From positions 434,001 through 498,000 of the forward strand of contig NC_134036.1 of the NCBI RefSeq assembly GCF_964204645.1: DNA of 64,000 nt. The letters run 5' to 3'. Position 1 is the stretch's first letter. Each line of letters begins with the position of its first letter. The stretch comes from Tubulanus polymorphus. Lineage: Eukaryota; Animalia; Nemertea. The notes under the pieces are model-generated. The model saw only the letters and a list, made by a program, of their open reading frames with translations, ran no database searches and was not told the DNA's origin. The translations under genes were made by a program, and so were the position numbers. Of this stretch, positions 40,226-45,700 are shown in pieces.

Positions 40226-40445
40226 GGCTAAACAAAAATGATACCTTGTTTCTCCGCAGCGGCCGGGTCATTTTTGTGAAATATGATAAAATTTATAAAC
40301 AGTTCATTTCTATAGCGGCCGGGTCTGTTATGGTTAAATTGATCACGATTTAAAAAAAAGTAATGTATAGGGTAGATAGGCGGCCGGCCGGGTCAACATT
40401 TAAGCTCAGCAGAGCGGAGAAACAAGGTATCAATTTTTTTTAGCC
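40226..40445. mobile_element. MITE, sister of 22098-22275
   Basis: ggctaaacaaaaatgataccttgtttctccgc ... gcggagaaacaaggtatcaattttttttagcc. Confidence 0.82.
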
Positions 40446-41535
40446 TAACGTATTCGACACTACGACATCTAGAAGGGCTGGTATAATAGTACGGGACTTA
40501 GTTTGTGCATGACTTACGACAAGCGTGAATAGACTCAATTCAACTGTGGCGTTTAGTGAATTCCCTGAGATAAATGCCCTGCACCCACGATCATTCGACT
40601 ATGACCATGTGAAATCTGAACGCAAATCACGGCGTCAATGCATTACGACATACCAGGGTACGGCTTCTGAATGAAACATGTGATTCCATATACCTTCGAC
40701 AGCCAAATCACCAATAATTTACCACCTAATTTGCCAATCAACCTCCTTACTTTTTTCATACTTTTCCCATTAAATGGGAGAAAGCAAAGCAAATACCGGC
40801 ACGGTACCGTAATATTTAACTAGCCCTGACAGATAACCTCTAATTCTTTCTAACATTATTTGATTGTTTATTTCTTTAGATTGTTTCGCTGCTATCTTTC
40901 AGTGGTCCAACGAGTTGTTGTTTGTGAAATCTAAAATTTAAAAAATAATTTGTATTTCGAATTTTTAAACTACACTTAACTTTGACGTGTAGAAAGTTAT
41001 TTAAAAAAAAATAGAACAATATATCTTTACTGTTCGGATCATTATCATTTAATTAAACTGATCTCGTTCTACCGCTGAAAATGGATCCAATATGGTTTAT
41101 GTCTTAGGGAACCGGTACCACAAGACACAAACGACCTAAACTAAGCAAGATAAATAAACGGTAGGCCTTATGTACAAATACGGGTAAGTATATTAATCGA
41201 TTAGTTTATGTATTCGCCACAGTATTTGGGGGCAGCACTAGACGATTGAGATTTTACTGAGCTGTGGCATGCGAGCAGGAATTCATCCCGCGATCCTTTT
41301 ATCTAACCCTCACAAATAGATATTAATCAATTACCCTGGGTCTTCGTCTTATTTGGTGACCCTCGAATTTGAAATAAAAAATACAACATCGATGAAAACG
41401 GGTTTTCAAGTGACGTGGACTAAAAATAAATTCTATTCAATAAAATATATACATTTGGGTTTGCATTTGATCGTAGACACCGGGCAGAATTTCTCCACAA
41501 TCGTTCAATCGAGTACTAGTCTTTGACACGATCAG

Positions 41536-41877
41536 ATGGCGTTTTCTCGAGCTCTTCAGCTTTTGCTGTGTTTCCTAGCGATCCTGGCGGTTTTATGGCG
41601 CGGTTTATTTCGGAGTGTTGTGGCGCCGGTGAATGGAGTTGTGTGTGCGGTGTGCGCAAGCGGAGTGGATGGAGTTGTGTGCCCGGTGTGTGGAAGTGGA
41701 GTGAATGGAGTGTATATGTGTCGTATGAATGTGGTATTTTTTATATCTTATTTTTTTCTTTATTTTTCATTATTTTTATTTTTAATTTTTTTTTTCATTT
41801 CATTCGTCCCTCACCCCCACCCCCACCCTCTCAATCTCAAGGTTTCAACTGGCAGCGGTGGAGTCGGAGTTCTCTAA
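41536..41877 (+). CDS. Putative 77-aa micropeptide with a hydrophobic N-terminus and two CxxC repeats (exons 41536-41733 and 41842-41877)
   Basis: MAFSRALQLLLCFLAILAVLWRGLFRSVVAP-VNGVVCAVCASG-VDGVVCPVCGSG-VNGVYMCRMNV|VSTGSGGVGVL*. A 108-nt GT..AG candidate intron is almost all pyrimidine. Between the two 36-nt repeats, 3 of 6 differences are synonymous and both Cys are kept. Confidence 0.45.
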   Translation: MAFSRALQLLLCFLAILAVLWRGLFRSVVAPVNGVVCAVCASGVDGVVCPVCGSGVNGVYMCRMNVVFFISYFFLYFSLFLFLIFFFISFVPHPHPHPLNLKVSTGSGGVGVL

Positions 41878-42457
41878 TGTGGCCTTGTCCGAGCTAGTGG
41901 CGGAGTGTTGATGACGCGGATATTACTACGGGGTACCTGCGATCAGAATAAGATGGAGGCGATAGCAATCTTCGACTGTGGGGGCTGTTGGATCTTTAGG
42001 TCCCCAGTCTGGTCCATTCTAGTCTGAATCTGCTGGTTCATTGCCTAAGGCTACCCATTGGCATCTTGCCGATTGGGCTCCCCGTTCACCCAGTTTTTCT
42101 CTGTCATCTGGGTGTCGGTTGTCTTATGTGGTGTGCTCAATTCTCAATTGGGTCCCCAGTTTGGTCCATTCTAGTCTGAATCGGCTGGTTTCTTCGCCTG
42201 AGGCTACCCATTGGCATCTTGCCACTTGGGTTCCCCGTTCACCCAGTTTTTCTCTCTCATCTGGGTGCCGGTTGTCTTTTGGTGTTGATGCTTCAAGATC
42301 GGATAACCCCCAAAGCCGAAGATGTTTGTCGCTTCCCATCTTACTCTGATTGCGGGTCCTCCGTAGTAACACCCGTGTCGTCAGCACCCCGCCGCTAGCT
42401 GGGTCGAGGCCATGTTAGAGAACTCTGACTCTGCCGCTGCTAGTTGGAACCCTGAGA
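41835..42457 (+). ncRNA. Long hairpin RNA candidate (162/163-nt arms, ~300-nt loop)
   Basis: Arms 41835-41996 and 42295-42457 are ~79% identical as an inverted repeat. Of 35 differences, 20 form G.U pairs in the plus transcript, 7 are A.C, 7 are transversion mismatches and 1 is a bulge (~91% paired). Confidence 0.6.
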
Positions 42458-44827
42458 ACTAAGACTTTGCTGTTATCAGCCAGAAGTTCTGTGCTGACTT
42501 CTTTCTCTTTCTCATGCTATATCAAATATGATGTATGCCGTATAAATATGTATTACCAACGTCTATATGGTTGTACTTCAAATTCCGTGAATTGCCGTGA
42601 AACTCTGGAATTAAATTTTTCATCCAAGGTTCTTTCCTCTTCCATCAAAATCTTTCCCAGTTTTTCTTGTCGCAGCAGATGATAAACGTCTATAATGTAT
42701 TCGTAAACTCTGTAATCTCGAACATCTTTTATGTACTTCAAATACATCGTATACTCTGTATCTTCGATTTCTAATTCCCCTTATCCTGGCCTTTCATCTT
42801 TTCCGTCATGTCATCATCTCGTTAATTAATGATTATGTACCATTTAATTTCAGCTTAATTTTATTTAGCCCACTTGGGGCAATAGTGGTAAATCAAGGGT
42901 TAATTTTTACTAATTCCAAAATACAGGGGTTTGATTCTCATAAAAAAGCCTGTTGGTGTTAATTTCTTACTAGCTCTAAGGCAAAAAACTCTCTCATTCC
43001 GTTCTCAAAAAACCTGGCTTATCGTGTGGGGAAGAAGTACATGGTTTGGCTGTATATGTACCTAACCCAGACACGAACGGAGCTGGCATAAATTTGTGGC
43101 ACAATAATAGTTAATACTACTAATGATAGGGATGGTTATGAGATAAAGCTTTCTCAAACCGCAGTGGTCAGGCTCTGTCTGACAAACATCTGGACTTAAT
43201 ATATAATATGCTCTCTTCCCTTTGTCATTTCACAAGCCAGAAGTCAAACTCTGACGGTGAGAAGTCTGGTGATGGCATCATCCAGAATCCGAATCTGGGA
43301 CTGAGTCCGATGGCACCCTTGGACGTTCCAACAACTTCCGAAGACTGTCTGGAAGACACGAAAATTTGGATCAGCTACAACTCATAAACTAAGTAAGATG
43401 AATGGATCCGCTATGGTAAGTTATAATATAAACCGATGCTTCTTTTTAGGTCTGATCACCAAGCGGCAGCAAGTGAAGCGTGACCCAACCAAGTCACGAC
43501 TCTTGTAGTCCGGTGGTCAATCCCATGAAACTACCCTCATCCAGCCCCGCTCCGAGTCCACAGAAAAGTTTTGCGTGGTAATGACCCACACCAAACACAA
43601 GAGTTTCAAAGCTAACATCATCCCAGCTCAAACCCTAGGATCTTCCCCCTTACCAATTCTCCTCTCCTCCCTCCTAATACCAGTAATCTTAATCATGTTA
43701 CTTCCGTCGTCTCTTACTCTTATTCCAGGTCTATCAACACTTCTGATATTCGGCCATCCACATCATTCAATTGAATACCACGTGCGAACACCAGCGATTA
43801 ACCAGACAGCTCAACGCACTCACTCCAGATCAACCATGTTCAACCAATACCACAGATCAGCAACCACTCCCAGTAAGTATAAGTAAGAACTAAGGGTCCA
43901 TTATCTATTGGTAAGTTAACTGACGCTTCAATTTCTAGATCTGATCATCAACAAGTTAAGCTGGCAACAAATGAAGTTTGGTTCGACTCGCTAATGGCTT
44001 TTGGAGCTTGGTCGTGAAAATACGATCATCTGGTCACGCACATATGAGGTTACCACCATCACTGCCTCTAAGCGTCAGGCATCATCGTTGCTGCTCAACT
44101 ACTTGGAGCCACCCTCCCTGTGCCCCTCTCCTCCCTTTAATACCGGTTTATCATCTTCTTCATGATACTGTGTCTAATTCTTCTTATTACAGGTTTACAC
44201 GGAGAAATCCATTAATCCAATGCCGAGGTACAACGAGACGCTACACGCAAAGATGTCACATGCGTCTGAGAGAATCTGACCAACAAACAATCAACAGATT
44301 CAACAGGTTATTTAATCTATTTTGAACTTTTATGGGATTAAAGGCTTTGTCCTAGTTTTCAATTTTGAAGGAGATTTTAAAAGGGAAATGAATACGAAAA
44401 TTCTGTACCTTTCGATCAATTCTCAGTTTTCTGAATTTCTGAAATTCCTGAATTTGGAAGGGGAAATATTCCAATTTCATTGTGTATTTTGAAGTGAGAG
44501 CCTTATTCTGATAAGACATCCTAACTGAGGTCTTATTCCTCTAGCTAATAGCTAACCTCTCCTTCAAACTATTACTACTACAGACTACCGGTCTAATTTG
44601 GCACGGTCTAAAAGAGCGAACCAGGTCCTTTCCAAATTTTGGACTGGTCTAAATCTATGTGTGTGGATAGAAACTGGTACCAGGTCCGGTCTAAATTGTG
44701 ATTCTGAATCTGCTTTAAGTAATGATGTCTTTTTTTACTAGTTTCAGCTATACTTCATCGAGGAGACAGTAGCGATTTATAAGCCAACCATGAATTACTT
44801 CAAGGGATGGATTTCTACATGGATTCA

Positions 44828-44950
44828 GGAGACAATAGTGGATTCTATAAACAATGATTCAGGAGCGGCAGAGACAATAGTGGATTCTATAAACAATGAT
44901 TCAGGAGCGGCAGAGACAATAGTGGATTCTATAAACACTGATTCAGGAGC
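44828..44950. repeat. 42-bp tandem repeat (3 copies)
   Basis: gagacaatagtggattctataaacaatgattcaggagcggca repeated. Confidence 0.9.
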
Positions 44951-45134
44951 TGCGGTAACTTTATAGCGCTATTTTCTAAAGGGGCCCCAATTTTTTTTTT
45001 CAAATATAACTCAATGCGTGTATAATCAAATGAATTTTTGATATAATGTTTAGAAATTAAATTAATAATGTATTTAGTAAGTGAGTCTAATAATTCATTC
45101 ATTCTTAGATCAATCTCCTCCAAGTATGCCAACA

Positions 45135-45545
45135 CGAGATCTTTTCTGTTGTTATTTTAAAGCATTCTATCAACTCGGTTAACAATAAACAAAACAAACA
45201 AATAACCATAAACCAAAACTGAATTAAACACACTCAAAAAATAACCGATACGATAGAATGCTTTAAAGAACTGATGAAAGATCAAGCGTCCATTGGAATT
45301 ACCCGCCCGCCTATAAAATTTCTATGAATAGTGTTGAGGAGGATCCGTCTGAACCTGACGGTTTGTAACCTTCTCCAAGCAGCCAACAATTTGAGATCTT
45401 TTCTGTTGTTATTTTGAAGCAGTCTATATCAGCTCAGTTAGCTATAAACAAAACAAACAAATAACCATAAACCTAAACTAAATCAAACACACTTAAACGC
45501 TAACTGATAGGATAGAATGCTTTGAATAACTGATGAAAGATCAAG
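45135..45545. repeat. Duplicated ~150-bp palindromic MITE-like unit
   Basis: gatcttttctgttgttattttaaagcattctatc ... gatagaatgctttaaagaactgatgaaagatc at ~45135-45285 and ~45393-45545. Confidence 0.8.
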
Positions 45546-45700
45546 CTTTCTTTGAAATAGTGCCCACCCATTCACTTACTGTAAGTGAATAATATCGTTT
45601 TATGAATGAAAAAGACTTAAGACTTACTAAGGGACCATTCATTAAGGTTGAACATTTTTTTAAGGTTCTAATTAAATGAACGGTCTCCTACTATGTGACT

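What the first reader, a model, noticed from the sequence alone, without database searches (positions are those of the whole stretch)
41835..42457. Long inverted repeat with the G.U bias of a selected hairpin RNA
Seen (hand alignment): of 27 transition differences between the arms, 20 give G.U pairs and 7 give A.C on the plus strand. Neutral decay of DNA TIRs predicts 1:1 (binomial two-sided p about 0.02). The arms are only ~79% identical yet ~91% paired, with a single 1-nt bulge. Six of the seven A.C mismatches have the A on the 5' arm, a preferred ADAR context. Established: this pattern marks hpRNA/endo-siRNA precursors and edited dsRNA. No target of the arms was seen in this window.
Basis: partly seen in the sequence, partly recalled or inferred. 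Interest (0 to 1): 0.8.

Follow-up and report, generated by a model that had tools for sequence, protein, structure and literature searches.

The report
Wobble-biased hairpin inside a multicopy repeat
The long inverted repeat and its one-strand G.U bias are real, but it is a fixed internal part of about 22 copies of a large, mostly non-coding repeat of a ribbon worm; the folding seems to have been selected only in the copies that spread, and no RNA product could be shown.

Summary
Arms 41835-41996 and 42295-42457 give 162 pairs: 128 Watson-Crick, 20 G.U, 7 A.C, 7 transversions and one bulge.

It is not a single-copy gene, and the arms are not the terminal repeats of a small transposon. The fold-back sits at the same place in about 22 copies (86-94% identical) of a 2.5-kb core. 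That core lies in an at least 11-kb, mostly non-coding unit found on all 12 large contigs.

The arm differences are inherited, and the family consensus already has 16 G.U against 4 A.C. Variants shared between copies keep the bias (25 WC/G.U against 7 WC/A.C). A separately diverged copy shows 7 against 0. Copy-private changes do not show it (22 against 23). Sequence outside the arms has no plus-strand mutation bias.

My reading is that the plus-strand single-stranded fold, probably RNA, was selected in the source copies, while dispersed copies now decay. It runs in the same direction as a conserved small ORF just upstream.

No target outside the family was found, and the ADAR context is poor.

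This scan has already noted similar G.U-biased fold-backs in other repeat families of this genome (s1-492787, s1-516393).

The parts
41835..41996 (+). 5' arm of the fold-back (162 nt)
   Evidence: present in about 21 other places of the genome at 86-92% identity
41997..42294 (+). Loop: two tandem ~152-nt units (41996-42147 and 42148-42294), each with local hairpins. This is the best conserved part of the whole unit (96-98% pairwise identity).
42295..42457 (+). 3' arm of the fold-back (163 nt; 42337 is the single bulged base)
40801..43338 (+). 2.5-kb conserved core of the repeat unit that carries the fold-back. The right end of the shared sequence is sharp at 43338 in most copies (two copies run on to 43531).
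41536..41877 (+). Small ORF (113 aa here) with a signal-peptide-like N-terminus and an in-frame 21-nt repeat. It ends inside the 5' arm. The start codon and N-terminus are kept in 17 of 17 aligned copies. Whether it is coding is only suggested.
   Evidence: no Pfam family above cut-off; no homologue found
40234..40748 (+). Upstream islands (40234-40404, 40461-40748) colinear with the other copies at 74-84% identity. They are full of stop codons.
44444..45576 (+). Downstream colinear islands (44444-44573, 44829-44954, 45098-45284, 45383-45576). They are not coding. The last two are copies of a ~190-bp module that is itself high-copy in the genome.

Best explanation
The inverted repeat is the stem of a ~623-nt fold-back. 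This fold-back is a fixed internal module of a dispersed repeat family of ~22 copies. Each unit is at least 11 kb and almost wholly non-coding, and is made of a left flank, a 2.5-kb core, a right block, a satellite and a 4.6-kb segment.

The two arms had already diverged in the family's ancestor. While the unit was spreading, changes that kept plus-strand pairing (WC to G.U and back) were passed on. Changes that broke it (WC to A.C) were not. After a copy lands, it decays without that filter.

Shown: the bias, that it is inherited, that it is absent among private changes, and that there is no strand-biased mutation outside the arms.

Inferred: the selected single strand is an RNA read from the plus strand, co-linear with the conserved small ORF that starts 300 nt upstream. 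The long imperfect dsRNA stem then acts in cis on that transcript. It could be a Dicer substrate whose small RNAs match only the family itself, or a stability, processing or propagation element. Which of these holds is not shown.
For: The fold-back lies at the same position in 20 full copies and several partial ones on contigs C1-C12. Homology continues on both sides.

In every copy the arms are only 75-81% alike, so their divergence predates the spread.

The consensus has 134 WC, 16 G.U, 4 A.C and 8 transversions (p=0.012).

Shared derived states: WC>GU 19, WC>AC 7, GU>WC 6, AC>WC 0. Singletons: WC>GU 17, WC>AC 22. Counted without direction, this is 25:7 against 22:23, Fisher p=0.017.

The diverged partial copy L046 has 77 pairs: 60 WC, 9 G.U and 0 A.C. 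Against the consensus it shows 7 WC>GU and 0 WC>AC.

Outside the arms the plus-strand spectrum is symmetric: shared 60 against 71, singleton 132 against 115.

The plus-strand stem folds 10-43 kcal/mol better than the minus strand in all 20 copies.

A plus-strand ORF start is kept in 17/17 copies. In codons 1-30, shared changes are 6 synonymous to 1 non-synonymous, against 4:10 for singletons (p=0.024).

Neighbouring genes differ between loci (GPCR, galactosyltransferase, sulfotransferase), so the copies are dispersed insertions.
Against: There is no RNA evidence at all. No listed run is on record as RNA. A possible 2015 RNA run of the same species label holds next to none of the words.

Compensatory double changes are not above control: 5 cells against 3.1 expected, p=0.2.

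The arms are less conserved than the loop and change faster by transitions than the rest of the core. They are CpG-rich.

No conserved poly(A) signal follows the hairpin on the plus strand. There is no Rfam match.

All counts are small. The split into shared and private variants can be blurred by recurrent CpG mutation or gene conversion, and the distribution of variants among copies is incongruent.

A G.T bias would arise equally from a strand-specific single-stranded DNA intermediate.
Confidence: 0.6

Rival explanations
1. A true hpRNA / endo-siRNA gene. The plus-strand hairpin would be diced into 21-23-nt siRNAs that silence a target gene in trans.
For: It has a long, mostly paired stem with runs of up to 47 consecutive pairs on the plus strand. 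The wobble bias is strand-specific. Multicopy hpRNA clusters and hpRNAs built from repeat sequence are known in Drosophila (PMC10317233).
Against: The arm and loop match only the ~22 family places in the 268-Mb genome, so no target gene was seen. No block of the arms is specially conserved as a mature small RNA would be. Private changes in the copies are unbiased, so most copies are not under this constraint. No small-RNA data were available.
Confidence: 0.15
2. A neutral inverted duplication carried along by a mobile repeat. The G.U excess would be chance, or a by-product of mutation.
For: The family is multicopy. The arms are not better conserved than their surroundings. Copy-private changes are unbiased. 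Covariation is not significant.
Against: Three partly independent samples point the same way: consensus 16:4, shared variants 25:7, L046 branch 7:0. The same substitution types are symmetric outside the arms. CpG decay is symmetric by construction.
Confidence: 0.15
3. A strand-specific single-stranded DNA hairpin used when the unit is copied or moved, for example in a rolling-circle type element. G.T is the least harmful mismatch in DNA too.
For: The copies are dispersed and also occur as tandem units of 13.66 kb with internal satellite arrays and mosaic flanks. No enzyme gene lies in the unit. A bias on one strand only requires a single-stranded form.
Against: The termini and target-site features of the unit could not be defined. 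The hairpin is internal and far from any end. A co-oriented ORF with synonymous-type shared changes suggests a transcript.
Confidence: 0.07
4. A footprint of RNA editing. A-to-I editing of the dsRNA would be fixed in new copies of an RNA-propagated element, or the A.C mismatches would be kept as editing sites.
For: Four A.C mismatches with A on the 5' arm are kept in 19-20 of 20 copies. Some WC/G.U polymorphisms are A/G opposite U.
Against: Among G.U-forming changes C>T dominates. In shared variants it is 14 C>T to 5 A>G, and on the L046 branch 5 to 2. Three of the four ancestral A.C sites have a 5' G (sequence; the neighbour preference is established knowledge of ADARs). The invariance of 8 sites is not beyond expectation.
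Confidence: 0.03

Closest known systems
Drosophila hairpin-RNA (hpRNA) loci, including multicopy clusters such as hp-tHMG and repeat-derived hp-ODox2 (PMC10317233)
   Same: It is a long inverted repeat within a longer, largely non-coding transcription-unit-like sequence. It is multicopy and contains repeat material. The arms are imperfect but mostly paired.
   Different: No transcript or Dicer-dependent small RNAs are shown here. The arms match no gene outside their own family. The copies are dispersed over all chromosomes inside an at least 11-kb unit, not in a local cluster. The loop is long (298 nt), is a duplicated structured unit, and is better conserved than the stem.
MITEs and foldback transposons (hairpin-forming terminal inverted repeats)
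   Same: It is multicopy and has an inverted repeat of >100 bp that could fold back.
   Different: The repeat is internal and homology between copies continues for kilobases on both sides. No flanking target duplication was seen and no stand-alone copies exist. The mismatches are strand-biased rather than symmetric.
Other G.U-biased fold-backs noted by this scan in the same genome (s1-492787: ~800-nt fold-back in a ~300-copy 10-kb gene-like repeat; s1-516393: ~100-150-copy module)
   Same: Same genome. Each is a one-strand wobble bias in a fold-back that is an internal module of a ~10-kb non-coding repeat, with the stem kept as structure and the centre as sequence.
   Different: This family is smaller (~22 copies) and its fold-back is 623 nt. 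Its arms and loop find no other family by BLAST.
Inverted-repeat dsRNA in 3' UTRs (e.g. inverted Alu pairs) that are bound or edited by dsRNA-binding proteins
   Same: It is a long imperfect intramolecular duplex placed just downstream of an ORF on the same strand.
   Different: Here the two arms are one dedicated, co-inherited module rather than two independent transposon insertions. Editing was not tested, and the context of the A.C sites is poor for ADAR.

Membership tests
hpRNA / endo-siRNA locus | Long inverted repeat able to form an extended intramolecular duplex | tested here: met
   162 pairs, 91% paired on the plus strand, stem about -257 kcal/mol
hpRNA / endo-siRNA locus | Primary transcript of the hairpin strand | not testable with these tools
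hpRNA / endo-siRNA locus | Dicer-dependent 21-23-nt small RNAs from both arms | not testable with these tools
   No small-RNA data could be reached
hpRNA / endo-siRNA locus | [quoted passage not shown] | tested here: not met
   The arm and loop searches of the whole genome return only the ~22 family places. Very short matches could be missed by the tool's first look.
MITE / foldback DNA transposon | The inverted repeats are the termini of the mobile unit | tested here: not met
   Copies stay homologous from about 40801 to 43338 and in colinear blocks beyond. The repeat lies 1 kb inside.
MITE / foldback DNA transposon | Target-site duplication flanking the repeat | tested here: not met
   No direct repeat borders 41835 / 42457 in the sequence
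MITE / foldback DNA transposon | Stand-alone copies of the inverted-repeat unit | tested here: not met
   All arm hits lie inside copies of the larger unit
ADAR-edited dsRNA | A-to-G differences between RNA and DNA in the duplex | not testable with these tools
   No reads could be laid
ADAR-edited dsRNA | Edited or mismatched A in a favoured neighbour context (5' U or A, not G) | tested here: not met
   The ancestral A.C sites 41904, 41920 and 41975 follow a G. Only 41948 follows an A.
Structured RNA under selection (generic) | Compensatory (two-sided) changes above control | tested here: inconclusive
   5 cells against 3.1 expected, p=0.2. The fraction paired is 0.9002 against 0.8986, p=0.04. 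The family is too young for this test.
Structured RNA under selection (generic) | Strand-specific excess of pair-preserving over pair-breaking transitions, absent in unpaired flanks | tested here: met
   16:4, 25:7 and 7:0 against 22:23 among private changes. The flanks are symmetric.
Known RNA families (Rfam 15), tRNA-derived elements | Match to a curated covariance model / tRNA-like fold | tested here: not met
   No Rfam match at gathering score or at E<=1. No tRNA found.

The most novel reading that the evidence does not exclude
This ribbon-worm genome may carry a lineage-specific class of mobile, gene-like, almost non-coding transcription units. Each family would be built around its own long RNA hairpin, kept by selection on one strand. 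This 22-copy family would be one of at least three such families, and here the hairpin is coupled to a small ORF with a signal-peptide-like start. The hairpin would be either the element's own means of spreading or a self-directed small-RNA generator (a 'mobile hpRNA gene').
Probability: 0.2. Interest if true: 0.75.

Novelty: new variant of a known kind. Interest (0 to 1): 0.45.

Why it matters
If the plus-strand fold is a selected RNA, this is a repeat family whose spread or control depends on a long dsRNA structure. The animal phylum concerned has no described endogenous RNAi loci. Together with the two other families noted by this scan, it would point to a recurrent design rather than a one-off.

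The practical lesson for the scan is that a G.U bias measured on a single copy of a repeat is an inherited family property. The informative test compares shared with private variants, and adds a diverged copy.

Tried and rejected
1. LTR reading. Pairs of cores 11-20 kb apart in the same orientation (C8, C5, C3) suggested LTRs. The sequence between and beyond them is repeated too, with a period of 13.66 kb, so these are tandem units and not LTR pairs.

2. Protein-coding exons. The colinear islands outside the core are full of stops in all six frames. There are no long ORFs in most loci. Nearby long ORFs are unrelated host genes, or have no Pfam match.

3. Unit termini and target duplications. 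The left border is a mosaic of different upstream segments in different loci. No clean end was found.

4. RNA evidence. The look-up of sequencing runs listed no RNA holder.

5. An exact-product look-up of a loop ORF found nothing.

6. miRNA-like conserved block in the arms: none.

7. Conserved poly(A) signal after the hairpin: none.

8. Rfam and tRNA scans: nothing.

9. Look-up of earlier findings by sequence: blank.

10. Homologue search with the ORF's first 70 residues: nothing.

Full report
OBSERVATION

The window holds an inverted repeat with arms 41835-41956 and 42336-42457. A local alignment extends it to 41835-41996 and 42295-42457, with one unpaired base at 42337.

Over 162 pairs I count 128 Watson-Crick, 20 G.U, 7 A.C and 7 transversion mismatches on the plus strand. 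The G.U pairs split 10 G-on-5' and 10 U-on-5'. Six of the 7 A.C have the A on the 5' arm. The binomial test of 20 against 7 gives p=0.019.

The 298-nt loop is a tandem duplication of a ~152-nt unit.

WHAT IT BELONGS TO

The genome is 268 Mb in 77 contigs, and the window is C12:434001-498000. Earlier notes of this scan call it a ribbon worm, Tubulanus polymorphus. I did not check the species name.

A search of the whole genome with 41800-42500 found 20 further full-length places at 86-94% identity on contigs C1-C12, plus a few partial ones. Searches with the loop alone and with one arm alone found the same ~22 places and nothing else.

Homology between copies does not stop at the arms. It runs from about 40801/40816 to a sharp shared point at 43338, which I call the 2.5-kb core. 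It continues in colinear islands at 40234-40404, 40461-40748, 44444-44573, 44829-44954 and 45098-45576.

In better-preserved loci the unit is at least 11 kb. It comprises a left flank, the core, a right block, a satellite array and a 4.6-kb segment. On C8 two units lie in tandem with a 13.66-kb period.

Most loci have no ORF of 170 aa or more. The islands are full of stops. The neighbouring genes differ from locus to locus.

So the inverted repeat is neither a single-copy gene nor the termini of a small transposon. It is an internal module of a dispersed, mostly non-coding repeat. I saw no target-site duplication around it and no stand-alone copies.

THE BIAS IS INHERITED

In every copy the two arms are only 75-81% alike. 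Copies are 86-94% like the window's copy, so the arm divergence predates the spread.

In a 20-copy alignment the consensus has 134 WC, 16 G.U, 4 A.C and 8 transversions. Each copy has 15-24 G.U against 4-12 A.C.

Of the window's 7 A.C, four (41904, 41920, 41948, 41975) are ancestral and nearly invariant. The others are private.

IS THE BIAS SELECTION?

I classed every state that departs from the consensus by its effect on the pair, and by whether one copy or several carry it.

| Class of change | WC>GU | WC>AC | GU>WC | AC>WC |
|---|---|---|---|---|
| Singletons (mostly changes after insertion) | 17 | 22 | 5 | 1 |
| Shared (arose in lineages that went on to give several copies) | 19 | 7 | 6 | 0 |

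Counted without direction, shared variants are 25 WC/G.U against 7 WC/A.C (p=0.007 against a neutral expectation of 0.54). Singletons are 22 against 23. The two classes differ (Fisher p=0.017).

An independent sample comes from a diverged, partly deleted copy (L046, C9:11357600-11360400). On the 77 pairs it retains, it has 60 WC, 9 G.U, 0 A.C and 8 transversions. Against the family consensus it shows 7 WC>GU and no WC>AC.

The control for a mutational cause is the rest of the core. There, plus-strand C>T plus A>G against G>A plus T>C is 60:71 for shared changes and 132:115 for singletons. CpG decay is symmetric in a palindrome by construction.

The plus-strand stem folds 10-43 kcal/mol better than the minus strand in all 20 copies. 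These 20 values are not independent.

WEAKNESSES

- Two-sided compensatory changes are not above a re-pairing control: 5 cells against 3.1, p=0.2. The family is young.
- The arms are less conserved (92-94% pairwise) than the loop (96-98%). They take more transitions per site than the rest of the core (0.24 against 0.14), which fits their higher CpG content.
- The distribution of shared variants among copies is incongruent, so recurrent mutation or gene conversion blurs the split into shared and private.
- All counts are small.

WHICH STRAND, AND IS IT RNA?

A one-strand bias needs a single-stranded form of that strand, either RNA or a strand-specific DNA intermediate.

In favour of RNA, an ORF on the same strand starts at 41536, 300 nt upstream of the stem. 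Its start codon and a signal-peptide-like N-terminus are kept in 17 of 17 aligned copies. In codons 1-30, shared changes are 6 synonymous to 1 non-synonymous, while singletons are 4 to 10 (p=0.024). That is the same pattern as in the stem.

This is only suggestive. The stretch is poor in A, so frames stay open by composition. Three copies are frameshifted and still open. The product has no Pfam family above cut-off and no homologue. No conserved poly(A) signal follows the hairpin.

The loop folds into local hairpins on both strands, with z -4.9 on the plus strand and -3.6 on the minus.

DIRECT RNA EVIDENCE COULD NOT BE OBTAINED

No listed run is on record as RNA. One possible RNA run of 2015 holds next to none of the sampled words.

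After that I sent no DNA of those places to any search tool. Searches started at 41803 or later, or ended at 41745.

There was one slip. The Pfam scan took the ORF by reference 41536-41877, whose translation spans those places. Local scripts on the closed machine aligned the whole core, including them.

ADAR

But three of the four ancestral A.C sites follow a G, the least favoured neighbour (sequence; the preference is established knowledge). G.U-forming changes are mostly C>T: 14 of 19 among shared variants and 5 of 7 on the L046 branch. Editing does not explain the pattern.

COMPARISON WITH WHAT IS KNOWN

Drosophila hpRNA loci are defined by Dicer-2-dependent small RNAs from an inverted repeat, and by a primary transcript that rises in dcr-2 mutants. 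Their arms usually derive from and match target genes. Multicopy clusters and repeat-derived arms also occur (PMC10317233).

Here only the duplex criterion is met. The target criterion is not met at BLAST sensitivity, and the rest is untestable.

The terminal-repeat and target-duplication criteria of MITEs and foldback elements are not met.

The closest parallels are two findings of this same scan in this same genome: G.U-biased fold-backs inside other ~10-kb gene-like repeats (s1-492787, s1-516393). My family shares no detectable sequence with anything outside its ~22 places in arms or loop, so it looks like a separate, smaller family of the same design. That link rests on their summaries only.

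VERDICT

The best reading, at confidence about 0.6, is that a plus-strand single-stranded fold, probably RNA, was selected in the source copies of a multicopy, mostly non-coding unit. The window's copy is one of its dispersed descendants. A specific hpRNA/endo-siRNA role is possible but unsupported (about 0.15).

Noticed in passing
window 41536-41745 (and on to 41877): A plus-strand small ORF with a signal-peptide-like start is kept in 17/17 copies. Shared changes in codons 1-30 are nearly all synonymous (6:1), while private ones are not (4:10). No Pfam family and no homologue were found.
   Followed up: partly
window 41629-41700: A G+T-rich minisatellite (36-nt pair here; a 21-nt unit in the family) varies in copy number between copies, always inside the small ORF. 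It reads as a 7-residue repeat.
   Followed up: partly
window 45098-45284 and 45383-45576: A ~190-bp module, present twice here, has at least 158 candidate places in the genome, most of them far from this family. Among them are three hits 3-4 kb apart on C4 (about 24.57-24.58 Mb). It is a separate high-copy repeat, or a module shared with larger families.
   Followed up: partly
window 41997-42294: The loop of the fold-back (two ~152-nt units with four local hairpins each) is the best conserved stretch of the whole unit (96-98%). It is low in CpG (o/e 0.36, against 0.9-1.0 in the arms).
   Followed up: partly
L031+L032+L041 (C8:13415000-13444999): Two complete units lie in tandem with a 13.66-kb period. 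Each has an internal satellite array of several kb. Similar arrays occur in the C5, C6, C9 and C11 loci.
   Followed up: partly
L036:4552-6360 (+) and L036:6774-8570 (-): Two convergent ~600-aa ORFs without any Pfam match sit in a ~4-kb insertion inside one copy of the unit on C3. This may be an unknown mobile element.
   Followed up: no
L046 (C9:11357600-11360400): An older relative of the fold-back has lost the inner half of its 3' arm and most of the loop, but keeps 77 pairs with 9 G.U and no A.C.
   Followed up: yes
window 44829-44954: Three tandem copies of a 42-nt unit lie in one of the colinear islands. The matching place in other units lies next to their satellite arrays.
   Followed up: no
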